The translations under genes and the position numbers were made by a program. Positions 25,665-52,449 of a stretch of DNA of 64,000 nucleotides are shown here, one piece after another. The stretch's first letter is position 1, and every line of letters begins with the position of its first letter. The notes below the pieces were generated by a model. It was given only the letters and a program-made list of their open reading frames with translations, was not told the DNA's origin and searched no databases. The stretch covers positions 1 through 64,000 of IMG/VR virus record IMGVR_UViG_3300037294_000266; one strand, written 5' to 3'.

Positions 25665-26120
25665 GACGGCATAGAAAGAAAGCTGAGTACATCCCCCAAC
25701 GTTTTAATCACTGCACGATCAAAACGTTGGAGGCTGCACTCTGTCAGACACGTTAGCGAGGAGTCGTCGCGTTTATGTCTGAAAGACTCTTTACCCACAA
25801 GGCCGGATGGGTCTAGAGTCTCTTTCTATGCGGCAGTACGGAGAACAAAGCTCAACGCACTATCGTTTACCATCGTGTGCCGCTGGGTAGCGAGGCAGCG
25901 GGCGATGGAACACACAACACTTGGCTATCACGACGAGTTTACCAAGCTGCAACGAATAAGTAGGGAGGAGCCATTGGCTCCTCCCTAGGTACGGCGATCC
26001 ATGGGGGATTGGAAGGCCGTTGCGTTTGAGGACAAGTCCTCAGTGCTTATACGCAATGAAGCGCATTGGGTGGACACTACTCGAGAGTAGATTCTTTTGT
26101 TAAAGAACACGTCCTACATA
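25665..26120 (-). ncRNA. candidate ~455-nt structured non-coding RNA (possibly two)
   Basis: No credible ORF; more than 10 nested stems; G-U pairs mostly favour minus strand; TATG at 5' end, TATGCCG at 3' end. Confidence 0.6.
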
Positions 26121-26140
26121 ACATAGGTGGCTTTTGGCTA

Positions 26141-27664
26141 TCAACCTTCAACCAATGCCATCAGTGCACGCGTATTGGCGCTGCCATCACGTACCGCTGC
26201 GTTTACCCATGTGTCGTAATGTCGAACCAACACATCAGCTGTGGCTGGCAAGAACATGTCGTTTTCCAGGACGAAGTCCTCACCCACACCGCCTGTCAAT
26301 GCAGCACTGCCTTTCTCACTGAGGAGGTTGAGGCTTGAACAGGTGTCGAGTAGACTTGTCACTGCATCACGACGTGCAACCGTGGTTTCAGGAGTCAGTT
26401 TCAGATCGTCAATAACGATGGCTTCTGACAGTGATTCAGTTGAAGCAGTGGAGTCTTCTTCCTCTTCTTCATCGTCGTCCTTGCCATCATCCTTACCGTC
26501 CTTTTCTTCTTCTTCATCGTCACTGCCTTCAGCAGCATCCGCTTCAGTATCGAGATCCACATCGTCAGTGGTGTCTGGAACAACATCGTCCACTGCGGCC
26601 ACATCAGCAGCATCAGGGATTTCATCCAGGCCATCTACGGCGGTGTCGTCTTCACCTTCAGCAGCCGCAACATCGTCTACCGCAGCTTCTTCAGCTTCGG
26701 CTTCGACATCTACCGAAGCATCGGTATCATCGTCAGCTTCTTCTGACCCAACCGCTTCCAATTCCAAGCCGGGTTCACCATCGTCAGCCGCTGCGCCAGT
26801 ATCGACGTCATCGCCAATGGCTTCTGAGTCATCGTCTTCGGTGCCAGTTATATCGGACGAATCGGTAGGCGCTGGAGAATCGTTCTCGACTGTAGCCGCT
26901 GAAACACCATCGGCCAACTGAGGACCTACAGGCAGTTCTTCGCGATGGGCGTCGAGGACGTCGCCCATCTTGTCTTCGCCACCGGCGCCGACACCTTCTG
27001 ATTCGGCACGAGCAGCGTCGGAGATGCCAACTGCTTCTTCATGCGCCTTGTTAACCAGAGTCTCAATGCGATCGACAGCATCAGCCATTTCGCCCAAGAC
27101 CTGAGTTTGACCGATACCTTCCATCGAGATACCGAGCGCTGCAACGCCTTCGCCAGCGCGTGCCATCAAACGCAGCACCATCGGACGAATGGTATCGACA
27201 GACATGTTTTCCATCGAAGCGATCATTACCTTTACATCACCGACATGTTCTTTAAACAGGTCGAGGACTTCGGCGCGGTGATGTACGCTTTCCATCGATG
27301 ACGTTGTTTCGGCGTCACGAGTGGTGAATGGAACTACTTCGTTGGCATCGACCTTGGCCTGGAGAGATTGTTCAATCTCTTCGATCCCGGTCAGGCGGGG
27401 TGTCAAGATGTCCTGCATGATCAGTTCGACGACTGCAGCAGGTTCAGTCACGCCTTCAACGGCAGTGAGGTCGGCCTGATGGTCGGCTGACTCAAGAACG
27501 CCTTCGGTGAGAATCTTGTAAGCCGACGCTGAAGAATCTTCCATTGAGGGCTGAAGAAGAATGGTGCGACCGAGTTCCAGCAACGATTCGAGACTGGTGC
27601 GGTAGCCTTGAGCCTCAGCAAGCATTTGCGAAGCAGTGATTGTTGCAGGTGCAATACGAGTCAT
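26141..27664 (-). CDS. acidic internal head protein with S-x-E processing sites
   Basis: TSLES, PSMED, SSMES, ASMEN, ISMEG, ASTES; long D/E-rich tract. Confidence 0.7.
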   Translation of the reverse strand: MTRIAPATITASQMLAEAQGYRTSLESLLELGRTILLQPSMEDSSASAYKILTEGVLESADHQADLTAVEGVTEPAAVVELIMQDILTPRLTGIEEIEQSLQAKVDANEVVPFTTRDAETTSSMESVHHRAEVLDLFKEHVGDVKVMIASMENMSVDTIRPMVLRLMARAGEGVAALGISMEGIGQTQVLGEMADAVDRIETLVNKAHEEAVGISDAARAESEGVGAGGEDKMGDVLDAHREELPVGPQLADGVSAATVENDSPAPTDSSDITGTEDDDSEAIGDDVDTGAAADDGEPGLELEAVGSEEADDDTDASVDVEAEAEEAAVDDVAAAEGEDDTAVDGLDEIPDAADVAAVDDVVPDTTDDVDLDTEADAAEGSDDEEEEKDGKDDGKDDDEEEEEDSTASTESLSEAIVIDDLKLTPETTVARRDAVTSLLDTCSSLNLLSEKGSAALTGGVGEDFVLENDMFLPATADVLVRHYDTWVNAAVRDGSANTRALMALVEG

Positions 27665-27835
27665 TTCTTAAACCCCTTATGGGACACATATCCGTTACAC
27701 GGAATATAAGATGTGCTTTAAATTCTGTCGAGGAGACAGCGTCTCACAATATAACCCCTTAGTATTTATAAAAAGAAGGATCGTTTAATTCGAGTCATCT
27801 TATGACTTTTACGTAAACCCTTAAGGAATTCTATC

Positions 27836-29890
27836 ATGTACGCCAGCTTTTCACGACTACTAGGGATCATCTCCGTGAAGGAGACACCGACCCACATCGT
27901 CGTCAGTGGTGTTCCTGGCTTACGGTTGTCCAAAGACATTTATAATGCTTGGAAGACAGGTAAGATCAGTGCGAACCTATTCACTTCGGTTTCTCGGTCA
28001 TCGGTGAAGTTCCCTAAGTTCTATGCGATCGAGATGTTGTACATCCTCGAACACCTGATGCAGTCACGCCGTACCTTTGTAGGGCGCCGTACCCTCAGTA
28101 AGATTGTTGATGAAATGGTGGCCAATACTTGGCTGCATAACATCGGTGGTCAGGACTTCAAAGCACGACTCGATTATTCAAAGCTAGACGAGCTCAACGT
28201 AATCCTGTTCACCTATCAGCGGAAGTTTATTGAAACGTACGACTGGGTGACTTACAAGTACAATCTACTTGGCATGCTGATGGATGTGGCAGCAGGTGGT
28301 GGTAAGACCATTACCAACTACGCCCTTGGCCACTGCCTCAAATCAGACACCTGCATATACGTCGTCCCTAAGAACTCGGTGATTGACGTTTGGGTGAAGA
28401 CAATCAGGTCGTTGTTCAAGACGCCGCAGGACTACTGGTACAGTCTGAGTGGTGTGGAGCCTGAAGCCGGCAAGAAGCATTACATCGTCCATTTCGACTA
28501 CCTGGAGAAGTTCTTAGACTTCGCCAAGAAGAACAAGTCGAAGTTTGGTAAGGTATTCATTGCCATTGATGAGTCGCATAACTTCAACGAAGATTCTGCA
28601 CGTACACGCTTCTTAGTTGATCTCTGCCACACGACCGATGCACGTGATGTCATCCACGCTTCAGGCACTCCATTTAAAGCGATGGGTTCTGAAGCCATTA
28701 CCTTGCTTAAGACAGTCTGTGCAGACTTCACTCCCGAGGTCGAACAGTCGTTCCGTAAGTTGTTTGGTAAGGAGGCCAAGAAAGCCCTTGAGATCTTGGC
28801 TAACCGAATTGGCATCGTGTCGTTTAAGGTGCTCAAAGACGAAGTCGAGACTCCTGGTGTAGATTACTTCGAACGACGCATCAAGATCAAGAACGGCAGT
28901 GACTATACACTGACAGCCGTGCGGGATAAGATGTCTGCGTTCATTACTCAGCGCTTGGAGATGTACAAGAAGCAAATGCCTGAGCATGAACTTATGTACG
29001 GCACATGCCTCGATCTACATGCCAAAGCCATCGGCGGGAGTAGTGCCGCTGTTACTGCGTTCGGTGAGTATAAGCGTAACATTGCGATTCTCCGGAAAGG
29101 TTACGATCCTGTGACCATGAAAGACCTCGTGATGGCCTGTAACCGCTACGAACTCAAAGTAATTGTTCCATCGCTTCCAGATAAGTACCGTAAGCCGTTC
29201 CTTAATGTACGGGCTATCATTAAATACGTCGATCTGAAAGTAATGGGCGAGGCGTTGAGTCAGGTTCTAGGGCGTTTGCGTATTCAGTGTCATTTGGACA
29301 TGCTTCCTGAAATGCCTTTGGATGAGATCATCGATAACTCCAAGAGCAAGACAGTTATCTTTACCAGCTACGTAGAAGTGGTGAAGGAACTTGAGATTCG
29401 TCTGAAGGAAGCTGGTTATAAGCCTCTGGTGGTGTATGGAGAGACTAACAAGGATCTTCCAGCCATCGTCAAGAAGTTTGATAATGACCCTGATGCCAAT
29501 CCATTGATTGCGACATTCAAGAGCCTGTCTACGGCGGTACCGTTGGTTTCAGCTAGCACTGAGATATTCACGAACTCTCCATTCAGGGAGTACGAGCGTA
29601 CCCAGGCGGTTGCACGAGTGGATCGAGTGGGTCAGGTACATCGCTGCTCTATCTACGATACGTTCTTGGACACTGAGATGGATCCAAACATCTCTACCCG
29701 GTCTAAGGACATTCTGGCATGGAGCAAGCAACAGGTCGAGGCGATCCTTGGGGTGCAGACTCCCGATGATCTAGATGTCTCGTTAGAGAACCTGGCTGAA
29801 GTGGACGGTGTCGTGTCTCTGGAATCGGTAGATCGGTTCATTGAGACGTTGTATCTGACTTTCCCCATTGATGTCATTGTCGATCAGTAA
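27836..29890 (+). CDS. SF2 helicase
   Basis: AAGGGKT, DESH, SGTP, KTVIFT, QAVARVDRVGQ. Confidence 0.9.
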   Translation: MYASFSRLLGIISVKETPTHIVVSGVPGLRLSKDIYNAWKTGKISANLFTSVSRSSVKFPKFYAIEMLYILEHLMQSRRTFVGRRTLSKIVDEMVANTWLHNIGGQDFKARLDYSKLDELNVILFTYQRKFIETYDWVTYKYNLLGMLMDVAAGGGKTITNYALGHCLKSDTCIYVVPKNSVIDVWVKTIRSLFKTPQDYWYSLSGVEPEAGKKHYIVHFDYLEKFLDFAKKNKSKFGKVFIAIDESHNFNEDSARTRFLVDLCHTTDARDVIHASGTPFKAMGSEAITLLKTVCADFTPEVEQSFRKLFGKEAKKALEILANRIGIVSFKVLKDEVETPGVDYFERRIKIKNGSDYTLTAVRDKMSAFITQRLEMYKKQMPEHELMYGTCLDLHAKAIGGSSAAVTAFGEYKRNIAILRKGYDPVTMKDLVMACNRYELKVIVPSLPDKYRKPFLNVRAIIKYVDLKVMGEALSQVLGRLRIQCHLDMLPEMPLDEIIDNSKSKTVIFTSYVEVVKELEIRLKEAGYKPLVVYGETNKDLPAIVKKFDNDPDANPLIATFKSLSTAVPLVSASTEIFTNSPFREYERTQAVARVDRVGQVHRCSIYDTFLDTEMDPNISTRSKDILAWSKQQVEAILGVQTPDDLDVSLENLAEVDGVVSLESVDRFIETLYLTFPIDVIVDQ

Positions 29891-29986
29891 CAAAGAAAAA
29901 AGAAAAGGAGAGAGGGGCTGATGCCCCTCTCTTATTCCGTCATGCCCCATAAAGGATCGGGGCTGAGCTTTAAAGGACACCGGTGT

Positions 29987-30205
29987 TCATGCCAGCGACT
30001 CGATGAAGGTTAGATCAGTTTCTTCATCGACATCAACGTGCGTTTCGAGATAGGTAATCTCAGCAAGCAGCAGGTGACATTCGAGTACAGCAGCCTGCCC
30101 AAACATCTTGGAACGAACATCTCCTTCCCAGATAGTGTTCCGCAGTTCCTGGAAACGCTTCTTCTTTGTATCAATCAGCCGGAGCCGATAGTCATTGTTA
30201 GCCAT
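29987..30205 (-). CDS. hypothetical protein
   Basis: 72 aa, AGGAG RBS. Confidence 0.6.
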   Translation of the reverse strand: MANNDYRLRLIDTKKKRFQELRNTIWEGDVRSKMFGQAAVLECHLLLAEITYLETHVDVDEETDLTFIESLA

Positions 30206-30217
30206 GTCAAACTCCTT

Positions 30218-30532
30218 TTAATGAACGATGTGAAGACCGTTGGCTTCAAGAGAGTTAATGGTACGACGCACCCAGTTCTCACTGGGCGGTTTCTTACCTG
30301 CTTTGTTAGCGACAGTGGAGCGGGTTGTAGCAGGGGCCACAAGAAGAGACAGTGGGTAGTACCCACATCGTCCGTCATATGGCGTGCCGTGCCGCACCAG
30401 TAGGTCGCGAGCAGAGTCAAGGTCTTCTGGAACGTCGTCAATATTGACTGCCAGATAACTGATCCCAGATTCTGCTTGTATCTTTCTGAAAACAACGCCG
30501 TACGGTTCGTGATAAACATTAGTAGTTTGCAT
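30218..30532 (-). CDS. hypothetical protein
   Basis: 104 aa, GGAG RBS. Confidence 0.6.
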   Translation of the reverse strand: MQTTNVYHEPYGVVFRKIQAESGISYLAVNIDDVPEDLDSARDLLVRHGTPYDGRCGYYPLSLLVAPATTRSTVANKAGKKPPSENWVRRTINSLEANGLHIVH

Positions 30533-30549
30533 TGATTTCTCCAGCGCAC

Positions 30550-30933
30550 TTAGTTTTTGAGGTAAGTGGCGTTTTCATTGCGGTTATAGTCAATAAGTTC
30601 GATGGTGGTTGAATCTACCTTCACAGTAACTTGCACGCGGTAGATAGGATGATCTACCTTGTCACCCATGATGGGTAACTTATCTACAATATGGCCGTAC
30701 TGCTCGAACTTAGCGTAGTCTTCATTCACCAGCCAAGCTTTCAGTTCAGTCCCCATGGCTGTTTGCAAGGAGATGGTAGTACCTCCTCCCATAGACGGAT
30801 AGAACTCAACACGTTCTGCTGTTGGGAATTCGTCAGGACTTACTTTAAACAGGATGTTCTTATCGCCAGTGAAAATACGAACGGCTGGGATGATGGAACT
30901 GAAGATTATTTTATTGCGCATGGTGTTCTCCAA
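30550..30933 (-). CDS. hypothetical protein
   Basis: Operon packing; true start may be MRNKII at 30921. Confidence 0.6.
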   Translation of the reverse strand: MENTMRNKIIFSSIIPAVRIFTGDKNILFKVSPDEFPTAERVEFYPSMGGGTTISLQTAMGTELKAWLVNEDYAKFEQYGHIVDKLPIMGDKVDHPIYRVQVTVKVDSTTIELIDYNRNENATYLKN

Positions 30934-31420
30934 TAGAACTGGTTAATTTGTTTAAGACGTTATTTATTTTATCAGTGAGAGCCTTTACAGTTAAAGTATT
31001 GAATCTGGACGGATCCTCATTTAACTTTCCATCGGCGATCTCTAACTGGTTCTTAAGGTCAGCATATTCCGTACGATCAAGTTCTTTCATCCGCCCAGAA
31101 TGTATAATCCATTCAACGGTGCGATTAAGTTCACAAACACTGCACCGGCTATGGTCGTGTGGTCGATGCACGTCACCAGCACTGCGCTTAACGATTGTGT
31201 GTGTTTTGACAACATTTTTTAATACGCGGTCGTTCCTAACTCGTTTATCTAGATATTCGATTTCATCATAACCCATCCTGTTTACGATAGTCTCACTAAA
31301 GAGCTCTCCGGTCGATAATTCCGAACTACATGTTGCAATCGACACCAGTGATGCTAATTCGAATGCTTCCTCTACTGTTAGGGATTCTGGATGGTCGATG
31401 GTGTCTAGAAGATCGTACAT
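30911..31420 (-). CDS. hypothetical protein with HxxCxxC motif
   Basis: AGGAGG RBS; HDHSRCSVC. Confidence 0.6.
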   Translation of the reverse strand: MYDLLDTIDHPESLTVEEAFELASLVSIATCSSELSTGELFSETIVNRMGYDEIEYLDKRVRNDRVLKNVVKTHTIVKRSAGDVHRPHDHSRCSVCELNRTVEWIIHSGRMKELDRTEYADLKNQLEIADGKLNEDPSRFNTLTVKALTDKINNVLNKLTSSIGEHHAQ

Positions 31421-31434
31421 GAACTATCCTCCTA

Positions 31435-31602
31435 TTAACGACTAGGCTTATTATAGCCAGGCACATCTTTAAGAAGAGGTTCTACGACCGCACGTACGCG
31501 CTCCATTTCAATCTTTTGCTTATTGTACTTGTCGTACAGGTAATAGCTTCCTGCACCGATAGCGGTTATAATGAGGGCAGTAGCAGCATTTTGAACGGAC
31601 AT
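31435..31602 (-). CDS. 55-aa early membrane-anchored protein (not in ORF track)
   Basis: MSVQNAATALIITAIGAGSYYLYDKYNKQKIEMERVRAVVEPLLKDVPGYNKPSR*; GGAG RBS; first gene after promoter 31643. Confidence 0.7.
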   Translation of the reverse strand: MSVQNAATALIITAIGAGSYYLYDKYNKQKIEMERVRAVVEPLLKDVPGYNKPSR

Positions 31603-31642
31603 GATAGTCTCCAAGACTTAGGTTATGTTTGGTACACATTGC

Positions 31643-31672
31643 TATCATGTATCTTTGAAAATAATTGGAATC
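31643..31672 (-). promoter_or_regulatory. putative early promoter
   Basis: GATTCCAATTATTTTCAAAGATACATGATA, 29/30 identical to 35127-35156. Confidence 0.7.
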
Positions 31673-31715
31673 TTGTCAATTCGGCATATAGAGGAGGGCA
31701 ACCGCCCTCCTCTAT

Positions 31716-35495: not shown

Positions 35496-35498
35496 GAT

Positions 35499-36159: not shown

Positions 36160-36960
36160 AAAAGAAAAAAGGCTTTGGGGTAACTCTTTGGCTAGCGAGC
36201 CCAGGGATGATCAATCCCCAGTCGTTAGCAATCTAAGAGTTCCCCGTGACCCTACAACATGACACTGACCTAAGACGGCCTTGGATTAAAATCCAATAAG
36301 TTCGAACTTAATCGATTTGAGTTTGGTTCGGTCTGTTTATACCGAGACTAGTCTTAGCTAACGAGTACCTTAAACACGCGCTTTGAGTCCTCTCGGTTGC
36401 TGAGGCTGCAATACTGAAACCCAGTGTGGCACACAATCCAATCAGACGATCGCCGTTCGAAGTTCCCACCTGCTCGTTCTTTTACAAACGAGTGCGAACG
36501 AATGATCCATTTCCACAGATCATCTTCCGAGTATGGGTTATCTTGAGGGGCTTCGGCTGATGAAGTTTTCCAGTACTGGACTGGTTCTTCGATGGCGCAT
36601 GCGACACTACAGTTCAGTAAGGCAGCGAGAGCAATTGCTCCGATGCTGATCGTTAACGCTCCATGGTCCGGGTTGGGATTGATCTTCTCGTCAGTATACT
36701 GGTAATACAGCTCACGGGAGCCACCCTTACGACCGCCTTATGATCGTGGGTGGCGGCGATGCCTGTTAGTGCGCTGATGGAGATGCCTGTAGATCGTAGA
36801 GGGGTCAGCTTAGCCAGAGGCCCCAGCCTCAAACTGCCAATCGAACGCACCAGCGATACAACTCGCCAGATTGTACGTGACCAAAATAGACTTCCAAGTA
36901 ACCCACCTGAGAGGAATCCGAACATTGCTGTCCTTATGATTCAGTTATCGGGAGTTTCAC
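36160..36960 (-). ncRNA. candidate ~800-nt multi-domain structured non-coding RNA
   Basis: Largest gene-free gap; more than 12 stems including a long-range 13-bp helix; GNRA loops on minus strand; TATG at 36960-36963; terminal stem plus U-tract. Confidence 0.65.
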
Positions 36961-36996
36961 ATAGATCATGTAACTATCGTAAATAAATACGGATGG

Positions 36997-45974: not shown

Positions 45975-46567
45975 GCTACGCCTTCTTCAGTTGCCGCCGG
46001 TGTTGCCGCAGTGTTGCCGGCGCGGTTACGATGCAGTTCCAGTAGATCTTTCTGCAGACGATCCATGCGCGGCATGATGTAGTAGTTCATGGAGCATTCA
46101 TAAACACCGAACTCTTCTTCGGTATCGATGATCACCAGAACTTCCAAACCAATGCCCTTACCCTTAGCCGTCCACTTACGGATGAACGCAACCTTGAAGC
46201 CATATTCATCAAACGCAGTAAGTACCGAGCGATTGATTTCACGACTTTCATCGAGGAAGAGATTGTCTTCACACTGCAAGGTAGCCGGGACATTGGCCAG
46301 CTTGAGAATGTCACCGCCATCCAAACGAGTCCAGGGTTGCTGAGTTTCCAAGGCCAGGTTAGACTGGTATTGAACAACTGCTTCAGCCAATCGCCCGTCC
46401 TTCGACAGATCGTGACGATGAAGAACCTTGGTCACCAGGTTAGCGCTGTCGTAATGGACACGGAGATTGCAGTTACCGAATCCTTCACGGCCAGCCGAAG
46501 TAAGGGTTACCTTATCGCTGATGGCAGCTTTAAGGACAGCATTGATAGAAGCATAGATGTTTTTCAT
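45971..46567 (-). CDS. hypothetical protein
   Basis: 198 aa, coupled to neighbours. Confidence 0.65.
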   Translation of the reverse strand: MKNIYASINAVLKAAISDKVTLTSAGREGFGNCNLRVHYDSANLVTKVLHRHDLSKDGRLAEAVVQYQSNLALETQQPWTRLDGGDILKLANVPATLQCEDNLFLDESREINRSVLTAFDEYGFKVAFIRKWTAKGKGIGLEVLVIIDTEEEFGVYECSMNYYIMPRMDRLQKDLLELHRNRAGNTAATPAATEEGVA

Positions 46568-47019
46568 CAGGTTCTCTTCGGTAAGATGTTGTTGATAACC
46601 ACGTGATCGGCGTATTCGCGCAGACGAGTGAGGATGTAGCCGACAGCCATGTGGTCATCGTCCAAGACCAGCATCATCATGCCCTGACATGTCGGATCAG
46701 AGCGTTCTTGGATGACATGGACTTCCATCGCATCGAAGTGCCCGATCAGTGTATCGACTTGATCGCATCGCTTGAACCACTCACTTGCGGTGATTGCACC
46801 GTCCGGCATGTCGTACAGGTATTGAGCGATGTCATGCGTTAACGCTAACGCGTAGCGGTAGTGTTCACTCAGGCCGGTGGCCAACAACACCATCGACTTG
46901 ACGGTGGGCATGACCATCGACTGAACGCCCCATGCCAAAGCCCGATCGAAATCAGGCAGTTTCTGTACGGCATCGACGACGCTCAATGGTTTGTCGAACA
47001 TGACAAGTTCATTGCTCAT
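46567..47019 (-). CDS. hypothetical protein
   Basis: 150 aa, AGGAG RBS. Confidence 0.65.
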   Translation of the reverse strand: MSNELVMFDKPLSVVDAVQKLPDFDRALAWGVQSMVMPTVKSMVLLATGLSEHYRYALALTHDIAQYLYDMPDGAITASEWFKRCDQVDTLIGHFDAMEVHVIQERSDPTCQGMMMLVLDDDHMAVGYILTRLREYADHVVINNILPKRT

Positions 47020-47028
47020 CTGACTCTC

Positions 47029-49011
47029 CTAGATAGGTTCAATACGGGTGATTGCATTCGGGTTGACTAATCTGATCCCGTCTTCAAAGAAGCCGAGTTC
47101 CTTTGCCGTCTTAACCTTGTCAGGACCTGCGCCATAACCTACGAACACAAAGTCGGTTTTCTTACTGATGCTCTTTGTTAACTTACCGCCGCGAGCGACG
47201 ACATCGTTTTCCATTTCACTACGAGTCTTGCCATCGAAGTTACTTCCAGTGACCACGACAGTCTTTCCAATGAGATCTTGGATTTCTGCCTTAGGTACCT
47301 TAGGTGCAGTGTACGTCAGGATCTTATCAAGTGCTATCAGATCATGCATCATCCCTAAGCTCGCCCCATTTAGGTTAGCAGCAACCTTAGGACCTACGTC
47401 TGGGATTAACTGGAGCTCTAATGGATCAGCCGACAGCAGTTCACTGAAGTTGTGATACTTGACAGACAGCGCCTTTGCTGTACTGTCCCCAATCTCAGAG
47501 ATTCCCACCGCCCTCAACACTTTATAGAAAGGTTGTGACTTGGAACGCAAGATGCTGGCTTGGATCTTGTCAGTCATTGTTTCACCAAGACCCGCACCCA
47601 AGAAGTCTTCTTCAGACAAATGGAATAGCGAGCTAAAGGATCCCAATGAACCGATGTTGATCAATGCCTCTACCGCGGCAGGACCAAGGTTCTTCACATC
47701 GATACCATCACGACTTACAAAGTAAGCCATACGGTTGACGATTTGTGCAGGACACGTTGTCGAGTTGCTGCAATATAGTTCAATGCCTTCATCATCACGT
47801 TTCGAGACGGGCGAACCACAACACGGACATTCGGTAGGCGTCGATATGACGCCGTGGTCGTCCATTCTAAGCGACAGTACCACAGATTCAATCTTAGGTA
47901 TTACGTCGCCTCGACGTGACACCACTACCGTATCCAGAATACGCAGGCCGAGTCGCTCTATTTCTTCGAAGTTGTGTAACGTGACACTGCTAATGGTCAC
48001 GCCGCACAGCTTAACAGGCTTGATCTTAGCCACTGGCGTCAGGACGCCCGTACGGCCCACCTGTACCTCGATCGACTCGAGGACTGACGTTGTTGTCTGT
48101 GCTTCGAACTTGTACGCTACAGCCCACCGTGGAGACGTAGAACGGTTACCTAGCTTAGCGCGTACCTTGGGATCGATGATCTTGAGTACCATGCCGTCAA
48201 TATCGTAGTCCAGTTCATGCCGCCGTCTTTCAATATCGGCAATAGTGTCCATGATTTTGTCGTTAGAGCTGAGTAGCCCCTTCCACAGACTTTCGACCGT
48301 GTAGATCTGATCTAAGATTCCTTCACCCAGATGTTCAAGAGGCATCGACTCGGTCTTGCCGTTACGGTGCACAATTACATCGTAAGCAATGAAACGAATC
48401 CCCATACCCTGAAGACTTTCGCCTTCCTTACGGCGCATGAGACCGGCTACCATGTTACGAGGGTTGGCGTAGACCTTCTTACCCGCTGCCAGCCGGCGCT
48501 CACACGCCTTCTCAAAGAAGTGGTGAGGGACGATGCATTCGCCACGGATCTCTACCTTACCTTTGTAACTGATCTCGCTTGGAACCCCTTCAAAGTAAAC
48601 AGCATTGTCGGTGATATCATCACCGATTTCACCATCACCTCGAGTCAGACCTGTTTTGAGCTTGCCTTTGTCGTAAAGGAGATCAAGACTGCCGCCGTCT
48701 AACTTATATTCGAGAGACGCATAAGGCGCCATGCCAATGCTAGTGATCCAATCGAGGAGTTCTTCCTCGTTGTAAACGTTCATCAGACTGAGCATGGGTG
48801 ACAGATGACTTACTTTCGAGAATCCGCCATCAGAAGCAGCACCAACCATGTTAAGTGGGGATAGCGGATCGTCAGTTTCCCCCTCCAACTCTTTAAGCTG
48901 GCGTTTAAGGGAATCGAACACTTCATCAGTAACGTCTGATTCGCCCTGATTGAAATACAGATCGCTCAGACGTTTGATCTCTGCCCTTAAGGCGATGATG
49001 CGGTTGTTCAT
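47029..49011 (-). CDS. ligA: NAD-dependent DNA ligase
   Basis: PMLSL, EYKLDG, TRGDG, NPRN, PRWAVAYKF, QVGRTG, Zn finger CPCC, BRCT; start moved to MNNRII. Confidence 0.97.
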   Translation of the reverse strand: MNNRIIALRAEIKRLSDLYFNQGESDVTDEVFDSLKRQLKELEGETDDPLSPLNMVGAASDGGFSKVSHLSPMLSLMNVYNEEELLDWITSIGMAPYASLEYKLDGGSLDLLYDKGKLKTGLTRGDGEIGDDITDNAVYFEGVPSEISYKGKVEIRGECIVPHHFFEKACERRLAAGKKVYANPRNMVAGLMRRKEGESLQGMGIRFIAYDVIVHRNGKTESMPLEHLGEGILDQIYTVESLWKGLLSSNDKIMDTIADIERRRHELDYDIDGMVLKIIDPKVRAKLGNRSTSPRWAVAYKFEAQTTTSVLESIEVQVGRTGVLTPVAKIKPVKLCGVTISSVTLHNFEEIERLGLRILDTVVVSRRGDVIPKIESVVLSLRMDDHGVISTPTECPCCGSPVSKRDDEGIELYCSNSTTCPAQIVNRMAYFVSRDGIDVKNLGPAAVEALINIGSLGSFSSLFHLSEEDFLGAGLGETMTDKIQASILRSKSQPFYKVLRAVGISEIGDSTAKALSVKYHNFSELLSADPLELQLIPDVGPKVAANLNGASLGMMHDLIALDKILTYTAPKVPKAEIQDLIGKTVVVTGSNFDGKTRSEMENDVVARGGKLTKSISKKTDFVFVGYGAGPDKVKTAKELGFFEDGIRLVNPNAITRIEPI

Positions 49012-49058
49012 GGATTGCCCCTGTCGAGCAAAAGAAAGATTCGGGTAACCGCCCACCC

Positions 49059-49532
49059 TCACTCGAGAGGATCGGTTCTCACTTTAACAATGTTTACCAA
49101 AGTACGGCCTAGCGAAGCATCTAATGGATCAATGTCTTTAAGGTGTACCGTCAGGCGAAACGGCTTTAGAGCCGAGTGATTAAGGAGATGACCGCCAACG
49201 TACTGGACTCTCCCATGCAATACCCACAGTTCGTTTACTTTTACGAACCCGTGTACAGAAACATGCCCGATCTTCTTTGGTTTCAAGTGAGCATAAATGT
49301 CAGAAATGGTCGCAGACCGATCCTGAGTACTTGGGAGCCAAGGGTGTTCGGCTAAACGCCGTTTTGGCCAACCGGTCATGATCGGAAGAGGGTCTTCTTT
49401 TAAGCACTCCCAGAGTTGCTCTTCAGTGAAACCTTCAGAGCCATCAATCTGAAGTTCTACTTCGGAGTCATGTGCTTGAAAGCGACTCCCTACATTCAAA
49501 TCGTCATCAAGTAACGCTATAGACTGCTGCAT
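49059..49532 (-). CDS. hypothetical protein
   Basis: 157 aa in operon. Confidence 0.6.
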   Translation of the reverse strand: MQQSIALLDDDLNVGSRFQAHDSEVELQIDGSEGFTEEQLWECLKEDPLPIMTGWPKRRLAEHPWLPSTQDRSATISDIYAHLKPKKIGHVSVHGFVKVNELWVLHGRVQYVGGHLLNHSALKPFRLTVHLKDIDPLDASLGRTLVNIVKVRTDPLE

Positions 49533-49543
49533 GACACTTCCTT

Positions 49544-50026
49544 TTATTTGACGACAGTCAATGTCGGTCGTTTTGCTGGAGGTTCGGGTGGCTGTGGCGG
49601 TATCTCACCAGCCACAGCGCCAGCCGCACTGTAAGGACGTAGAACAAGCGATCCACATAAAGGCGACATGATGATGGTGGTTGGATCCAAAAGCATCATG
49701 TCATCGCCTGCTGGGCCGATACCGACTATGTCACCCAGTAAGATTCGAATAGTGAATGGCTGGCCTTTAAAGCGCGCTTCAAACAGCAGGTGATTGTTAT
49801 CACGTCGCTGATTGACTGCTGCCATTGAATTGACGTTGAAAATGACAAAACCTGACACACTACCCAAGTCATCTGCACTAATGACATGGTCGATCATTTG
49901 TGGATTGTCCTGTAACAACTGCTCAGTGGCAAGAACATAGAGGAATACCTTGACCTCCAGACTTTCAAAATAGGCCCGATACCCTAAATACTGGATCATG
50001 CAGAGTTCGTTAATATCGATCTTCAT
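49544..50026 (-). CDS. sspB: SspB-like ClpXP adaptor
   Basis: YLGYRAYF, VIFNV..MA, FEARFKG.P..I, C-terminal KRPTLTVVK (E. coli SspB ends RPALRVVK). Confidence 0.75.
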   Translation of the reverse strand: MKIDINELCMIQYLGYRAYFESLEVKVFLYVLATEQLLQDNPQMIDHVISADDLGSVSGFVIFNVNSMAAVNQRRDNNHLLFEARFKGQPFTIRILLGDIVGIGPAGDDMMLLDPTTIIMSPLCGSLVLRPYSAAGAVAGEIPPQPPEPPAKRPTLTVVK

Positions 50027-50373
50027 CGAGCATCCCTCGGATTAAGACATAGGTATTCAGGATACGCATCCTTCACCAACCTGACGAGAATAGCCTTACG
50101 CTCTTTCTTGACAGTGCACGGGAATTCAAACACCCTGATATCGTGATCTTTCGAATACAGTCCGTTGAGAAGTTTATTCGAATGCCGCCCAATTGACAAC
50201 TGGTTAAGCTGAGCATCGACTTCTTTACTGACGTGCTCATTCTGCCCTAAGAAGAACCGACCAGTTGCTACGTGTTCTAATACGTAACAGCCTTGGTCAG
50301 TTATCTTACTGCGTTTGCTTCTACCTGAGGACGAGTGTAGCCAGTTGATGGCAGTGCCCTGGGTTTCAGCCAT
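50023..50373 (-). CDS. degenerate GIY-YIG domain protein
   Basis: GCY...FFLG, GRHSNKLL, LN; catalytic Arg not evident. Confidence 0.6.
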   Translation of the reverse strand: MAETQGTAINWLHSSSGRSKRSKITDQGCYVLEHVATGRFFLGQNEHVSKEVDAQLNQLSIGRHSNKLLNGLYSKDHDIRVFEFPCTVKKERKAILVRLVKDAYPEYLCLNPRDAR

Positions 50374-50378
50374 TGTAT

Positions 50379-50693
50379 TTAATCCGTAGGAAGGAGTACT
50401 GTGGATATCACGGGAGTGAACGTGACTTTCATTTTCACCACGGCGATAGTACGCTGACCTGGAAAGTCTTCGATTGCTTCAATGCCCCGCGCTGGACGAT
50501 AGACATCCCGGCAGATAGCCACCAAAGCTTTCAGTGCCGCTTCAGCAGTACGGGTGTCTTGGAACGTCAGTGCTTCTTCGAGGAACACCGTGTAGCCAAT
50601 AGAGGCTTCACCAACATGCTTGATGTAACTTGTCTTACAGTTTGTTTCTTCGATCTTTACAACGATCTTTTCACCAACATCTGCAATTCCCAT
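50379..50693 (-). CDS. hypothetical protein
   Basis: 104 aa, GGGAG RBS. Confidence 0.6.
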   Translation of the reverse strand: MGIADVGEKIVVKIEETNCKTSYIKHVGEASIGYTVFLEEALTFQDTRTAEAALKALVAICRDVYRPARGIEAIEDFPGQRTIAVVKMKVTFTPVISTVLLPTD

Positions 50694-50723
50694 AACACTC
50701 CCCTCGGTGATGTCGCCGTATAT

Positions 50724-51284
50724 TTATCGGCAGAATGAATCGTAGCCTACATAGGCCGCTTTCTTTTGTGTGGTAAACACATAGGACATAGCTGGCTTCA
50801 GGATCTGAATACCTTGTTCGCCAGTATCGACATAGAGCGAATACCAACTATCCTTACTAAGACCCACTACAGTGATGGCAGAACCATTCACATCAATTTG
50901 CGTCTGTTCATCGACCTTGGATGTATCTCGGAACTGGAAACCAAGAATTGAGTGTTGCATGTACGAGTATGACCGCCGGCCTGTGATAGTGATGCCAGTC
51001 TTTTCATCTTCGTATTTACACGGACGATAATCTACATAGCGCACACCCGATGTGGTGTATTCGTTATAACCATAATAGCCCAAGCCACCAACAGCCCCAA
51101 ATAGAACTAGTGTGATGAGCAGATACGTGCGCACCATTACTTTCTTAAGCTGCGCAGCACGAGCGTTCATGCGATCTCGTGCGATACTTCCTGGATCTCG
51201 TCGAATCCCAGAAGCCAGTCGGCTGAGGTCTGCAGCATTAACTTCATCATTGTTTTTATCTTGGATAACTAGTGCTTCACTCAT
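50724..51284 (-). CDS. early single-pass membrane protein
   Basis: TM YLLITLVLFGAVGGLGYYGY; follows promoter 51328. Confidence 0.7.
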   Translation of the reverse strand: MSEALVIQDKNNDEVNAADLSRLASGIRRDPGSIARDRMNARAAQLKKVMVRTYLLITLVLFGAVGGLGYYGYNEYTTSGVRYVDYRPCKYEDEKTGITITGRRSYSYMQHSILGFQFRDTSKVDEQTQIDVNGSAITVVGLSKDSWYSLYVDTGEQGIQILKPAMSYVFTTQKKAAYVGYDSFCR

Positions 51285-51327
51285 TTGTAAATCCCCATTA
51301 GTGGTGAACGTTGTATGTATCCAGGTG

Positions 51328-51356
51328 TATAATGTATCGCTCTAATTTTTTTAATT
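51328..51356 (-). promoter_or_regulatory. putative early promoter (weaker upstream box)
   Basis: GCGATACATTATA core with A-rich upstream region. Confidence 0.5.
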
Positions 51357-51415
51357 AAGGGAAATAAAAAATGGTCATACCGCATAGAGAGCCAGGCAGT
51401 TGCCTGGCTCTCTAT

Positions 51416-51847
51416 TTAACGAGTGTAGCCAATTTCAACATGAGGGTCTTCTTTATCAGGGTCTTGTAGAAACCCTATCAATGTAGGTTTCACCTCGGTG
51501 ACAGTAGGTTTCACTGTTTTATGACCGAGGATACGTTTCAACCAATCAAGATTAAACCCACTTGCTTCACGCACACCGCCATGAGATATCACACAGCGCT
51601 TCAACTTGAAGATGGATGCAAATTCTTCCATGTGTCGCTTATAGGACATGACCGTATAGAACACTGTATCTGGGTCGAGGATATAAATTGATTCGAGTGA
51701 CTTAAGCACGCTGGGTTCTCCGATGTCGAGTATCTTACAGATAGCTTCGACTTCTTCGTACGAGTCTGCAATGATTAAGTTGATGCCACTAGATGCTCCA
51801 TTCATGATAAACCTCATTGGTTGGTTATGGTTGTTCGCCATTATCAT
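51416..51847 (-). CDS. hypothetical protein
   Basis: 143-aa ORF. Confidence 0.55.
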   Translation of the reverse strand: MIMANNHNQPMRFIMNGASSGINLIIADSYEEVEAICKILDIGEPSVLKSLESIYILDPDTVFYTVMSYKRHMEEFASIFKLKRCVISHGGVREASGFNLDWLKRILGHKTVKPTVTEVKPTLIGFLQDPDKEDPHVEIGYTR

Positions 51848-51869
51848 GTATGATTGAAAACAATTCGAG

Positions 51870-52265
51870 TTAGGTGCCGATCACTTTGATCATCACAGTG
51901 ACAACACCTGCACTGATCATAGTTTCACCCTTACCAACCCTAGTGTCTCCTTGAACAACCTTCCCTCTGCACGACGTGAGTGACACTGCATTAAGTGATG
52001 TGAACACTTGATCGCTAAATGAAGACGTGTCGAATATAGCTTGTGGATCGACGTGTAGGATTTCAGTAAATCCAGAGCCCGCGTAATTAAACGAGAACGA
52101 GCCATTTACTGACATGGTGACCCCATACCACTCCTTGACTTGCTTGGTCACGTCCTTGCCATCTTTGCCAATCACTTTTCTAGCATCCAGCACTGTCTGT
52201 TTGGCGACCGCTTTAGACAGTTTGGCAATACTCCCTAATAGGGATGAAAAGTTCTTGTTGCTCAT
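51870..52265 (-). CDS. hypothetical protein
   Basis: 131 aa, AGGA RBS. Confidence 0.6.
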   Translation of the reverse strand: MSNKNFSSLLGSIAKLSKAVAKQTVLDARKVIGKDGKDVTKQVKEWYGVTMSVNGSFSFNYAGSGFTEILHVDPQAIFDTSSFSDQVFTSLNAVSLTSCRGKVVQGDTRVGKGETMISAGVVTVMIKVIGT

Positions 52266-52289
52266 GATTCATCCTACATTAGTAATTTC

Positions 52290-52438
52290 GGCAAATAAGA
52301 CCTGTGTGGCTTTCACCACACAGGTCTCGAGTACAGGCGCCGTTGGCTGCGCAGCATCGTCTCACGACGTTACCATCGCGCTGCCGGGTTAGAACTATGC
52401 TGGATCACCCCCTTACTCGACAGTTATACTGCCCGTAC
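52290..52438 (-). ncRNA. candidate ~150-nt structured small RNA
   Basis: TATG at 52438-52441; TCGAGTA/TACTCGA closing stem with internal hairpins (CGUC-GUGA-GACG); 12-bp terminal hairpin. Confidence 0.45.
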
Positions 52439-52449
52439 ATATAATTAGA

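What the first reader, a model, noticed from the sequence alone, without database searches (positions are those of the whole stretch)
25665..52441. Three RNA-only transcription units with the same layout: a possible jumbo-phage late ncRNA system
Seen: in an otherwise gene-dense window, the three unexplained gaps (25665-26120, 36160-36960, 52290-52438) all run TATG, dense secondary structure, terminator, on the minus strand. All would start with GT(A/G) and all lie near virion or fibre genes. They share no obvious sequence. Inference: a set of late structural or regulatory RNAs, e.g. for assembly, packaged cargo, decoys for host RNA-binding or defence proteins, or phage-nucleus export.
Basis: inference. 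Interest (0 to 1): 0.7.

Follow-up and report, generated by a model that had tools for sequence, protein, structure and literature searches.

The report
Jumbo-phage RNA genes, one ribosome-complementary
Two of the three gaps are conserved, folded RNA genes of phiKZ-related giant phages, and the small one displays an invariant 17-base stretch that is the exact partner of the ribosome's mRNA-docking tail, which suggests a phage RNA that acts on host ribosomes; the third gap is not shown to be an RNA gene.

Summary
Gap 3 (52292-52438, minus) belongs to a roughly 110-150-nt RNA family with 27 distinct members. They occur once per genome in phiKZ, phiPA3, 201phi2-1, PA1C, DT01 and uncultured jumbo phages, and in none of about 185,000 bacterial species genomes. 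Covariation supports four helices (17 of 21 pairs compensated). In phiKZ the homologue is an abundant, discrete RNA of about 150 nt with mapped ends. Its invariant junction, U(A/G)AGGGGGUGAUCCAG(C/U), pairs contiguously over 17-20 nt with the 16S rRNA 3' end, and 23 of 27 members have no start codon at Shine-Dalgarno spacing. My leading but untested mechanism is trans binding to the anti-Shine-Dalgarno tail of the 30S subunit.

Gap 1 (about 25665-26117, minus) is a different RNA of about 450 nt. It is strongly structured (z = -9.9) and conserved in 12 DT01-clade genomes, always upstream of a DUF488 gene; 21 of 35 core pairs are compensated. Its function is unknown.

Gap 2 has no relatives and no excess structure over its 5' two-thirds. 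It holds a 127-codon open frame with gene-like codon usage but no canonical start, so "RNA-only" is not supported there.

The three are not one system. They are instances of the promoter-structure-terminator RNA units already reported for phiKZ-like phages.

The parts
52292..52438 (-). Gap 3 small RNA, about 147 nt. It runs from G of TATG through the P1-P2-junction-P3 core (52329-52438) to the intrinsic terminator.
   Evidence: Model R1 scores it 94 bits, E = 1e-18. Fold z = -4.65. The family alignment A7 shows covariation. The phiKZ homologue is a discrete RNA of about 150 nt.
52438..52441 (-). TATG box at the 5' edge of the gap 3 RNA. The inferred start is G52438.
   Evidence: It is conserved as TATGTAC in DT01-type copies and as TATAG in phiKZ-type copies. 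The phiKZ 5' adapter junction lies at TAT|AG.
52399..52415 (-). Invariant junction UAAGGGGGUGAUCCAGC, the complement of the 16S rRNA 3' end.
   Evidence: All 27 members pair contiguously over 17-20 nt with the E. coli rrsH 3' end read in L204. The motif is unique in its own genome. Duplex energy is -23 to -32 kcal/mol and the net after opening is about -16.
52331..52338 (-). P1 3' strand. It pairs with 52431-52438 and closes the RNA at its 5' end.
   Evidence: Helix 1 is 99.5% paired and 5 of its 8 pairs carry compensatory changes.
52358..52369 (-). P3b hairpin capped by a GNRA tetraloop (GUGA here).
   Evidence: All 4 pairs of helix 4 covary. Across most members (GGGA, GUGA, GCGA, GAGA) the loop is GNRA; phiKZ has CAGGA.
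52292..52327 (-). Intrinsic terminator of the gap 3 RNA: a 13-bp GC-rich stem followed by UUAUUUG.
   Evidence: Seen. Relatives keep the stem through compensatory changes.
25665..26117 (-). Gap 1 large structured RNA, about 450 nt. It may be two tandem units split at hairpin T1.
   Evidence: Fold z = -9.9. It is conserved in 12 genomes. RNAalifold predicts 69 pairs, 36 of them compensated.
26117..26126 (-). CCTATGTTATG promoter-like boxes at the 5' edge of the gap 1 RNA.
   Evidence: Relatives carry GTATAGTATG|TAGGAC at the same place. TCCTATG and CCTATG are enriched upstream of genes.
26001..26010 (-). C-rich loop AAUCCCCCAU on a covarying stem.
   Evidence: A(C/A)(U)CCCCCAU-type loops are conserved in most members while their stems differ.
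25961..25987 (-). Internal hairpin T1 of the generic terminator type, followed by UUAUUCG.
   Evidence: The stem covaries. The same hairpin sequence recurs many times in related genomes.
25829..25959 (-). Core multi-helix domain of the gap 1 RNA. A UCGUU/AACGA helix closes two hairpins, and a third hairpin follows. One hairpin carries the invariant loop GAACUCGUCGUGAUA.
   Evidence: On a plain MAFFT alignment (A8), 95.7% of cells are paired and 21 of 35 pairs are compensated. No shuffle out of 500 reached this, and slid controls gave 30-56%.
25684..25740 (-). Terminal long hairpin in which CCUCC pairs with GGGGG. A U-rich tract and CUAUGCCG (25667-25674) follow.
   Evidence: Its pairs carry compensatory changes. 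CTATG at 25674 belongs to the terminator-type class.
25262..25627 (-). DUF488-family gene that always follows the gap 1 RNA. It has its own GTATAG box and Shine-Dalgarno sequence.
   Evidence: It hits Pfam PF22751 at E = 6e-5, below the curated cut-off. The DT01 homologue is annotated DUF488. The linkage is seen in the 10 of 12 aligned genomes whose sequence reaches the gene.
36160..36963 (-). Gap 2. It runs from TATG at 36960-36963 to a branched stem plus U-run at about 36160-36255. It is not established as an RNA gene.
   Evidence: No relatives were found. Fold z is +0.92 for the 5' part and -2.0 for the 3' part. Rfam gave nothing.
36354..36734 (-). A 127-codon open frame with no ATG, GTG or TTG until codon 101. 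Its codon usage is like that of small genes here. Two further in-frame open segments lie upstream, separated by TAA stops.
   Evidence: See: score 0.16, against 0.14-0.28 for neighbouring real genes and -0.22 for off-frames. The ESM Atlas search was uninformative.

Best explanation
The window comes from an uncultured, phiKZ-related jumbo phage whose closest cultured relative is Pseudomonas phage pPa_SNUABM_DT01. Two of the three gaps are stand-alone RNA genes with the phiKZ-type layout: a short TAT(G/A) promoter box, a structured RNA whose 5' end is tucked into a helix, and an intrinsic terminator.

(1) Gap 3 encodes a small RNA present once per genome across phiKZ-like phages. It folds into a closing helix P1, a hairpin P2 and a branched arm P3 capped by a GNRA loop. 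An invariant 17-nt junction, UAAGGGGGUGAUCCAGC, is left between them. That junction is the complement of the whole single-stranded 3' tail of 16S rRNA plus the first bases of helix 45, and no start codon follows it. I infer that the RNA base-pairs in trans with the anti-Shine-Dalgarno tail of 30S subunits. It would act as an mRNA-mimicking decoy or dock that changes which messages ribosomes can start on during infection. Transcription, the discrete ends, the fold and the complementarity are shown. Ribosome binding and its consequence are inferred.

(2) Gap 1 encodes an unrelated, much larger structured RNA restricted to the DT01 clade and always placed before a DUF488 gene. What it does is unknown. 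It is most likely either a trans-acting RNA or RNP component, or a long regulatory leader.

(3) Gap 2 is most likely an ORFan message or a decaying gene with a long terminator structure, not an RNA gene.
For: Gap 3 family:
- It has 27 distinct members, from exact-motif scans of IMG/VR, JGI metagenomes and cultured phages. There is one copy per genome in five complete phage genomes.
- About 185,000 bacterial species genomes gave only two chance hits in coding sequence.
- Covariation: 92% of cells are paired and 17 of 21 pairs are compensated. That is 96 compensated cells against 27.6 in shuffles (0 of 500 as high); slid controls gave 24-38%.
- Expression in phiKZ: Nanopore cDNA depth is 1200-8000 over the RNA, against 20 downstream. 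The strand-switch adapter sits at the TAT|AG 5' end and a poly(A) tail at the 3' end. The same 3' end carries a ligated Illumina adapter in three runs from two studies.
- The junction pairs over 17-20 contiguous positions with the 16S 3' end in 27 of 27 members. The A/G change at the second position keeps the pair.
- A control scan of rRNAs and tRNAs finds this site in 27 of 27 members. It finds nothing family-wide for the gap 1 RNA.
- 23 of 27 members have no start codon at Shine-Dalgarno spacing.
- Net binding energy is about -16 kcal/mol after the opening cost.
- The neighbouring gene differs between phages, and in PA1C the next gene is on the other strand.

Gap 1.

Gap 2.

Phage type: DT01 carries phiKZ-type virion and non-virion RNA polymerases (PMC8541153).
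Against: - No experiment or data set examined here shows the RNA on ribosomes.
- The central base of the motif is always G, giving a G.U wobble with 16S U1537, and never the perfectly pairing A. An A-centred version exists elsewhere only as a true ribosome-binding site. This points to a constraint beyond anti-Shine-Dalgarno pairing, or to a different partner.
- Unconstrained folds partly pair the G-run with a downstream ACCC/ACCU, with a median opening cost of 7 kcal/mol.
- Pairing beyond 14 nt would have to open the base of helix 45.
- The A7 alignment was fitted to the model, which favours the structure.
- No RNA data exist for this phage itself, since it comes from a salt-lake metagenome.
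- The timing of expression is unknown.
- The phiKZ RNA may already be listed among the 17 '5'UTR-derived ncRNA candidates' of PMC10914365, whose table I could not read.
Confidence: 0.6

Rival explanations
1. The gap 3 RNA is a cis-acting 5' leader or attenuator of the gene behind it. Premature termination would control that gene, and the Shine-Dalgarno-like stretch would be a ribosome standby site or irrelevant.
For: In the window, DT01, phiKZ, phiPA3 and 201phi2-1 a co-directional gene follows within about 30-110 nt. Short RNAs made by promoter-proximal termination in 5'UTRs are described as a class in phiKZ and 201phi2-1 (PMC10914365, PMC11512511).
Against: No conserved downstream gene is evident from the annotations: PHIKZ204, a DarB-like helicase in phiPA3, gp305 in 201phi2-1, and hypothetical genes in the window and DT01. 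In PA1C the next gene lies on the opposite strand. Read-through in phiKZ is at most about 1% by contig depth. The following gene has its own Shine-Dalgarno sequence.
Confidence: 0.15
2. The invariant junction of the gap 3 RNA is the binding pocket for a phage or host protein or a small ligand, or a tertiary core. Its match to the 16S tail would then be coincidental or secondary.
For: Absolute invariance of 14-17 nt amid covarying helices, together with a GNRA-capped arm, is typical of ligand- or protein-binding RNAs. The central G is never replaced by the better-pairing A. Part of the G-run can pair internally.
Against: The chance that a fixed 14-mer pairs (G.U allowed) with one given 14-nt target is about 2e-7 by my calculation. 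The match also continues 3-6 nt further. No Rfam riboswitch or ribozyme resembles it. There is no conserved gene association, which a riboswitch would need.
Confidence: 0.25
3. The gap 1 element is a long regulatory 5' leader of the DUF488 gene, or the RNA partner of its protein, rather than a free-standing trans-acting RNA.
For: RNA and gene are adjacent in the 10 of 12 aligned genomes whose sequence reaches the gene, and in the same orientation.
Against: The element ends in a long hairpin plus U-tract and a YUAUGCCG site of the terminator class. The gene then has its own conserved GTATAG box and Shine-Dalgarno sequence. An element of 450 nt with eight or more helices is far larger than known leaders. 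No test of protein binding was possible.
Confidence: 0.3
4. Gap 2 is a protein-coding or recently decayed gene with an unusual start, plus its untranslated regions. It is not an RNA gene.
For: The 127-codon open frame scores 0.16 on codon usage, like neighbouring small genes. The same frame scores positive further upstream across two TAA stops. The 5' 310 nt fold no better than shuffles. A GGAG lies 8 nt before an in-frame AUC that would begin a signal-peptide-like stretch.
Against: There is no canonical start codon. No homologue turned up in phages, IMG/VR or the ESM Atlas. The atlas recognition score is below that typical of real proteins.
Confidence: 0.5
5. The gaps act as DNA elements (origin, packaging site) or are mere read-through UTRs with no stable RNA.
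For: None specific. The hairpin-rich sequence could also be read as DNA structure.
Against: The compensatory changes keep RNA-type pairs, including G.U, on one strand. The phiKZ homologue of gap 3 has defined 5' and 3' ends and 60- to 400-fold higher depth than its flanks.
Confidence: 0.03

Closest known systems
Short promoter-proximal '5'UTR-derived' ncRNA candidates of phiKZ (17) and sRNAs of 201phi2-1 (11, including the conserved sRNA005) found by ONT-cappable-seq (PMC10914365, PMC11512511)
   Same: The layout is the same: a phage promoter, a structured RNA under 250 nt, an intrinsic terminator, high abundance and no ORF. The phiKZ homologue of gap 3 behaves exactly so.
   Different: Those papers, as far as their text is held, do not describe this RNA, its family-wide conservation or its 16S complementarity. 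Their tables were not readable here. The gap 1 RNA is about 450 nt, well outside that size class.
Shine-Dalgarno elements of mRNAs, including extended ones
   Same: The sequence is the same: the junction differs from the perfect complement of the 16S tail at a single G.U position. True ribosome-binding sites with AGGAGGTGATCCAG followed by ATG exist in other phages.
   Different: Here no start codon or ORF follows in 23 of 27 members. The element sits inside a closed, structured, terminated small RNA, and the complementarity of 17-20 nt far exceeds the usual 4-9 nt.
6S RNA and other mimic or sponge RNAs (CsrB/RsmZ type)
   Same: The proposed logic is the same: an abundant, structured RNA imitates the normal nucleic-acid ligand of a core machine and occupies it.
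   Different: The target would be the ribosome's 16S tail rather than RNA polymerase or a CsrA protein. There is no sequence or structural relation, and binding has not been shown.
Valine tRNA-derived fragment of Haloferax, which binds the small subunit and competes with mRNA (PMC5711459, PMC11009984)
   Same: It is a small non-coding RNA proposed or shown to occupy the small ribosomal subunit and reduce mRNA binding.
   Different: It is a cellular, archaeal, tRNA-derived RNA that binds at the decoding site, not through Shine-Dalgarno-type pairing. It is not phage-encoded.
Phage-encoded ribosomal protein bS21 (bioRxiv 10.1101/2021.10.11.463225)
   Same: It is another route by which large phages may act at the anti-Shine-Dalgarno region of host ribosomes.
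   Different: It is a protein rather than an RNA, and the phage groups differ.
Large structured phage-associated ncRNAs in Rfam (GOLLD, ROOL) and group I introns, considered for gaps 1 and 2
   Same: The size and the density of helices of the gap 1 RNA are comparable.
   Different: No Rfam model matched at gathering score or at E up to 10. Nothing suggests homology.

Membership tests
phiKZ-type promoter-proximal small ncRNA (Putzeys et al. class) | Own transcription start site, with a terminator less than 250 nt downstream that yields a dominant short transcript | tested here: met
   For the phiKZ homologue of gap 3, the 5' adapter junction lies at TAT|AG and the 3' end about 150 nt on. Depth is 1200-8000 against 20 downstream. 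For the window copy this is inferred by homology only.
phiKZ-type promoter-proximal small ncRNA (Putzeys et al. class) | No ORF of at least 10 aa preceded by a Shine-Dalgarno sequence | tested here: met
   23 of 27 members have no start codon 3-15 nt after the G-run. The four exceptions are non-conserved GUGs.
phiKZ-type promoter-proximal small ncRNA (Putzeys et al. class) | Size under 250 nt (applied to gaps 1 and 2) | tested here: not met
   Gap 1 is about 450 nt and gap 2 about 800 nt. Gap 1 would fit only if it splits at hairpin T1 into a unit of about 160 nt and one of about 290 nt, which was not testable.
Riboswitch or cis-regulatory leader | Conserved association with a particular downstream gene or pathway | tested here: not met
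   For gap 3 the downstream genes differ, and in PA1C the next gene is on the opposite strand. For gap 1 the association with DUF488 is conserved, so this remains open there.
Riboswitch or cis-regulatory leader | Match to a described aptamer class | tested here: not met
   Rfam 15 gave nothing at gathering score in the whole window. Only sub-threshold chance hits appeared in the gaps.
Functional Shine-Dalgarno site of an mRNA | Start codon about 4-12 nt downstream that opens a conserved ORF | tested here: not met
   In contrast, the A-centred motif in small phages is followed at once by ATG.
Anti-Shine-Dalgarno-binding trans RNA (proposed here; no established family) | Conserved, contiguous complementarity to the 16S 3' tail | tested here: met
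   17-20 contiguous pairs in 27 of 27 members.
Anti-Shine-Dalgarno-binding trans RNA (proposed here; no established family) | The complementary stretch is accessible in the folded RNA | tested here: inconclusive
   It is unpaired in the covariation-supported consensus. Thermodynamic folds partly pair the G-run, with a median opening cost of 7 kcal/mol, and net binding stays at -16.
Anti-Shine-Dalgarno-binding trans RNA (proposed here; no established family) | Physical association with 30S or 70S in infected cells | not testable with these tools
   The runs are coded, so gradient fractions cannot be identified.
tRNA, tmRNA or group I intron | Detection by ARAGORN or the Rfam models | tested here: not met

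The most novel reading that the evidence does not exclude
phiKZ-related jumbo phages encode a dedicated small RNA that base-pairs with the entire anti-Shine-Dalgarno tail of host 16S rRNA, and into helix 45. It would occupy or remodel ribosomes in trans, acting as a ribosome-directed counterpart of 6S RNA. Such an RNA could shut down or re-route Shine-Dalgarno-dependent initiation during infection. Alternatively, it could mark or cleave the 16S 3' end through the roughly 20-bp duplex. The DT01 clade additionally carries a second, roughly 450-nt structured RNA of a new class coupled to a DUF488 gene.
Probability: 0.4. Interest if true: 0.9.

Novelty: new variant of a known kind. Interest (0 to 1): 0.72.

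Why it matters
How nucleus-forming jumbo phages take over translation is an open question. Their mRNAs must leave the phage nucleus and compete for host ribosomes. So far only proteins have been reported to target ribosomes in phiKZ (PMC10914614).

An abundant RNA carrying a 17-20-nt complement of the ribosome's mRNA-docking tail gives a concrete and cheap hypothesis. It is conserved from phiKZ to distant uncultured relatives. It can be tested at once in the phiKZ/PAO1 laboratory system.

If true, it would be, as far as the searched literature shows, the first RNA that mimics a ribosome-binding site in trans. It would also be useful as a portable translation inhibitor or an orthogonal-ribosome tool.

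The finding also corrects annotation. Short ORFs are called on top of this RNA in DT01 and Viktualia. Finally, it adds a new large structured RNA (gap 1) to the short list of big phage ncRNAs.

Tried and rejected
- Rfam at gathering score on the whole window, and at E up to 10 on each gap, gave only chance sub-threshold hits. ARAGORN found nothing.
- RNAalifold on a plain MAFFT alignment of all gap 3 members failed, because the variable arms were misaligned. I replaced it with a covariance model built on the DT01-type subset and re-aligned all members to it.
- For gap 2 I ran DNA searches in DT01 and five relatives, tblastn of the flanking proteins and of the open frame, a peptide-pattern scan of IMG/VR, and the ESM Atlas. 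All were empty or uninformative.
- No RNA runs exist for this phage itself; only metagenomic DNA runs hold it.
- The supplementary tables of the two transcriptome papers are not held. I therefore could not check whether the phiKZ RNA is already listed there.
- A scan of conserved gap 1 blocks for rRNA or tRNA complementarity found nothing family-wide. The idea that the C-rich loop of gap 1 pairs with the G-run of gap 3 rests on only 5 bp and was dropped.
- The gap 1 core model found no copy in phiKZ, phiPA3, 201phi2-1, PA1C or one further jumbo contig.
- An A-centred version of the motif retrieved only genuine ribosome-binding sites in small phages, and no RNA family members.
Neither counts as evidence.
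- The Pseudomonas 16S 3' end could not be read with the tools. The E. coli sequence was used instead. From memory, the Pseudomonas variant would make one further pair Watson-Crick.


Full report
WHAT THE WINDOW IS. The window is the first 64 kb of a single 266,646-bp record. DNA of this record is held only in salt-lake and sediment metagenome runs. The only cultured relative found is Pseudomonas phage pPa_SNUABM_DT01, of 265.5 kb; a flanking 507-aa protein is 52% identical. DT01 carries phiKZ-type virion and non-virion multisubunit RNA polymerases and clusters with Noxifer and phiKZ (PMC8541153). The phage therefore belongs to the phiKZ-related jumbo phages. In those phages, from my own memory of Ceyssens et al. 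2014 (not checked here), late promoters have a TATG core.

CHECK OF THE OBSERVATION. Folding against dinucleotide shuffles gives z = -9.9 for gap 1 and -4.65 for gap 3. For gap 2 it gives +0.92 over the 5' 313 nt and -2.0 over the 3' 251 nt.

- TATG by itself says little. YTATG is 3.5-fold enriched outside coding sequence, with 207 of 625 sites lying in 9.4% of the genome. Most of these sites follow a GC-rich hairpin directly, as hairpin-YTATG(Y)CG, and are often readable on both strands. That is a terminator-type signal. A smaller class, (A/T)TCCTATG, looks promoter-like.
- Gaps 1 and 3 end at sites of the first kind.
- Neighbouring genes are virion proteins and an SNF2-type helicase beside gap 1, an NAD-dependent DNA ligase and hypothetical genes near gap 3, and ORFans around gap 2.

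GAP 3: A CONSERVED SMALL RNA.

Discovery of the family. A DNA search of 2.2 kb around gap 3 against the whole DT01 genome returned a single match, and it fell exactly on the 5' half of the gap at 83% identity. The flanking proteins found nothing. The pairwise alignment shows invariant blocks and a terminator stem kept by compensatory changes.

Collecting members. I scanned IMG/VR, JGI metagenomes and cultured phages with the invariant 13-14-mer plus a downstream anchor. This gave 27 distinct copies, nearly all on contigs of 240-320 kb. They include phiKZ, PA7, phiPA3, 201phi2-1, PA1C-like phages and Viktualia.

Distribution. A covariance model finds exactly one copy in each of five complete phage genomes. 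The pattern is absent from one genome of each of about 185,000 bacterial and archaeal species, apart from two chance matches inside GC-rich coding sequence. Rfam has no such family.

Structure. All members share the same order of elements:
- a TAT(G/A) box;
- P1, which pairs the first 8 nt with the last 8 nt of the core;
- a P2 hairpin;
- a long junction that starts with the invariant U(A/G)AGGGGGUGAUCCAG(C/U);
- a branched P3 whose inner hairpin is capped in most members by a GNRA loop;
- a conserved ACGG;
- the P1 3' strand;
- one or two GC-rich hairpins with a U-rich tail.

On the model-guided alignment of the 27 sequences, 92% of cells are paired and 17 of 21 pairs carry compensatory changes. 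There are 96 compensated cells against 27.6 in column shuffles, with 0 of 500 shuffles as high. Sliding the partners by 1-3 columns drops pairing to 24-38%. One caveat applies: the alignment was fitted to the model.

Expression. No RNA data exist for this phage, so I used the phiKZ copy. It is identical in an IMG/VR contig the size of phage PA7.
- In a Nanopore cDNA run, word depth is 1200-8000 across the RNA. It is 20 on the downstream gene side and about 140 upstream.
- The strand-switching adapter abuts the A of TAT|AGAGC, and a poly(A) tail abuts a position just after the first 3' hairpin. This defines an RNA of about 150 nt on the predicted strand.
- The same 3' end carries a ligated Illumina adapter in three runs from two studies, with up to a 76-fold step in depth.
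- These are assembled contigs, so the depths are rough, but the ends are clear.
- The class is known. Putzeys et al. list 17 such RNAs in phiKZ and the 201phi2-1 study lists 11, and function is unknown for all of them. I could not read their tables. I found no paper that mentions this RNA or any phage RNA complementary to the anti-Shine-Dalgarno sequence.

The key feature. The invariant junction is the complement of the 3' end of 16S rRNA.
- I read the E. coli rrsH 3' end from the record; it ends in GGAUCACCUCCUUA. Against it, every one of the 27 RNAs forms 17-20 contiguous pairs. These cover the whole single-stranded tail and extend 3-6 nt into the 3' strand of helix 45.
- The one central G.U, where a perfect Shine-Dalgarno sequence has A, is invariant. 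The second position varies between A and G, and both pair with U.
- The motif occurs once in the phage's own genome, and no antisense partner exists there.
- A blind scan for conserved 9-mers complementary to E. coli 16S, 23S, 5S and three tRNAs recovers this site in 27 of 27 members. It recovers nothing comparable for the gap 1 family.
- 23 of 27 members have no AUG, GUG or UUG 3-15 nt after the G-run, and the four exceptions are not conserved.
- Duplex energies are -23 kcal/mol for 14 nt and -26 to -32 for 18 nt, against about -9 for AGGAGG. After a median opening cost of 7 kcal/mol, the net remains about -16.
- By my calculation, a fixed 14-mer pairs (G.U allowed) with one given 14-nt target with probability about 2e-7.

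Context. There is no conserved downstream gene:
- phiKZ: between the gp203 helicase and gp204;
- phiPA3: before the gp203-like DarB-type helicase gene;
- 201phi2-1: between gp304 and gp305;
- PA1C: followed by a gene on the other strand;
- the window and DT01: among hypothetical genes, about 3-5 kb from a DNA ligase in the window.

This argues for a trans-acting RNA rather than a leader.

MECHANISM PROPOSED FOR GAP 3. Three things are shown: a discrete, abundant transcript in phiKZ; the fold; and the complementarity without an ORF. I infer that the junction pairs with the anti-Shine-Dalgarno tail of 30S subunits, so that the RNA occupies the mRNA-docking site as a decoy. Other consequences are possible:
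- it could tether something to ribosomes;
- it could protect the 16S 3' end;
- it could expose the 16S 3' end to a double-strand-specific nuclease through the roughly 20-bp duplex.

Points against the proposal:
- The central base is never A, although AGGAGGTGATCCAG does exist as a true ribosome-binding site directly before ATG in small phages.
- Thermodynamic folds partly pair the G-run with a downstream ACCC/ACCU.
- Pairs beyond the tail would have to open helix 45.
- No binding data exist.

I put the ribosome-pairing step at about 0.4-0.5 and the existence of the RNA family at above 0.95.

GAP 1: A LARGE STRUCTURED RNA OF THE DT01 CLADE. DT01 has a syntenic 513-nt gap between the 507-aa homologue and a DUF488 gene. 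The alignment shows invariant blocks and hairpins with compensatory changes. DNA searches in ten further IMG/VR jumbo genomes that carry the gap 3 RNA found the element in all ten. In the 10 of 12 aligned genomes whose sequence reaches the gene, it lies just upstream of the DUF488 gene.

- RNAalifold on the 12 sequences predicts 69 pairs, of which 36 have compensatory double changes.
- The 131-nt core (window 25829-25959) was aligned by MAFFT alone. There, 95.7% of cells are paired and 21 of 35 pairs are compensated. That is 68 compensated cells against 21 in shuffles, with 0 of 500 shuffles as high, and slid controls give 30-56%.

The anatomy, 5' to 3', is:
- a GTATAGTATG|TAGGAC start box;
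- an invariant small hairpin (UGCGC/GCGUA);
- a variable hairpin;
- a hairpin presenting a C-rich loop (CCCCC);
- hairpin T1, which matches the generic terminator hairpins repeated throughout these genomes;
- a junction closed by UCGUU/AACGA, which holds a hairpin with the invariant 15-nt loop GAACUCGUCGUGAUA and a second hairpin;
- a further hairpin;
- a long terminal hairpin in which CCUCC pairs with GGGGG;
- a U-rich tract and YUAUGCCG.

The DUF488 gene then has its own GTATAG box and Shine-Dalgarno sequence. I cannot tell whether the element is one RNA or two units split at T1. A model of the core finds no copy in phiKZ, phiPA3, 201phi2-1, PA1C or one more distant jumbo contig. Rfam finds nothing. 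The function is unknown. The fixed link to DUF488 allows either a leader or an RNP role, but the size, the terminator and the separate gene start box favour a separate RNA.

GAP 2: NOT SHOWN TO BE AN RNA GENE. No DNA or protein relative exists in DT01, in five related jumbo genomes, in the phage collection or in IMG/VR. Conservation therefore cannot be tested.

- The 5' 313 nt fold no better than shuffles.
- One frame is open for 127 codons (36734-36354). It scores 0.16 on a codon model trained on this genome. Neighbouring small genes score 0.14-0.28, long genes average 0.32 and wrong frames average -0.22.
- That frame has no ATG, GTG or TTG until codon 101.
- The same frame scores positive further upstream across two TAA stops. 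This fits a decaying gene, an unusual start (a GGAG lies 8 nt before an in-frame AUC that opens a signal-peptide-like stretch), or an assembly error.
- The 90-aa ATG ORF with an AAGGA box scores like non-coding sequence, at -0.10.
- The ESM Atlas was uninformative.
- The 3' end is a branched stem followed by a U-run. The simple terminator scan did not call it.

COMPARISON AND VERDICT. The shared layout is real for gaps 1 and 3. It is the standard form of stand-alone RNA units in phiKZ-like phages, a class already reported but not understood. The three gaps are not one system, because they differ in family, in phylogenetic range and, for gap 2, in kind.

Three things appear to be new:
- the family-wide definition of the gap 3 RNA;
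- its invariant complement to the 16S 3' end;
- the gap 1 RNA as a large, covariation-supported RNA linked to DUF488.

I rate the finding as a new variant of a known kind, with high interest because the ribosome hypothesis is directly testable in phiKZ and PAO1.

Noticed in passing
window 23597-25275 (minus): ORFs 24559-25275 and 23597-24670 overlap by 112 nt. They hit consecutive parts of the same virion-protein PHROG (phrog_16120, positions 33-218 and 246-356). This looks like one gene split by a frameshift, which could be programmed, a mutation or an assembly error.
   Followed up: no
genome positions 97-118 and 266514-266535 (the first pair lies in the window): The same terminator hairpin plus TTATG occurs at both ends of the 266,646-bp record. 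The ends therefore repeat each other, through terminal redundancy or a circular-assembly overlap.
   Followed up: no
whole genome, e.g. window 38443/38464, 57542/57565, 35163/35184: GC-rich hairpins flanked on both strands by YTATG(Y)CG form a dominant class of bidirectional terminator-type sites. The TATG core thought to mark late promoters is mostly found in this context.
   Followed up: partly
L002:1528-1650 (DT01 PA10_00263) and L138:1498-1587 (Viktualia CDS0006): Short hypothetical-protein ORFs are annotated on top of the conserved small RNA, and the DT01 one is antisense to it. They are probably false gene calls.
   Followed up: partly
L213-L216 (IMG/VR contigs of about 40 kb or fragments): AGGAGGTGATCCAG directly followed by ATG serves as a real, unusually long ribosome-binding site in a group of small phages.
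   Followed up: no
window 26001-26010 and 25729-25733 / 25693-25697: The gap 1 RNA displays a CCCCC loop and pairs a CCUCC with GGGGG in its last hairpin. These are anti-SD-like and SD-like runs, reminiscent of the G-run of the gap 3 RNA. Only 5 bp of mutual complementarity exist, so no link is claimed.
   Followed up: partly
window 55086-55518 and 12768-12962; genome 116654-117440, 119091-120549, 149241-149822, 159308-159834: My crude gene calling left further long intergenic stretches, some of them between divergent genes. They were not examined for RNAs.
   Followed up: no
L137:1-1425 (PA1C): The SNF2-type helicase next to the RNA is annotated as two overlapping CDS in PA1C, so the gene may be split.
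   Followed up: no
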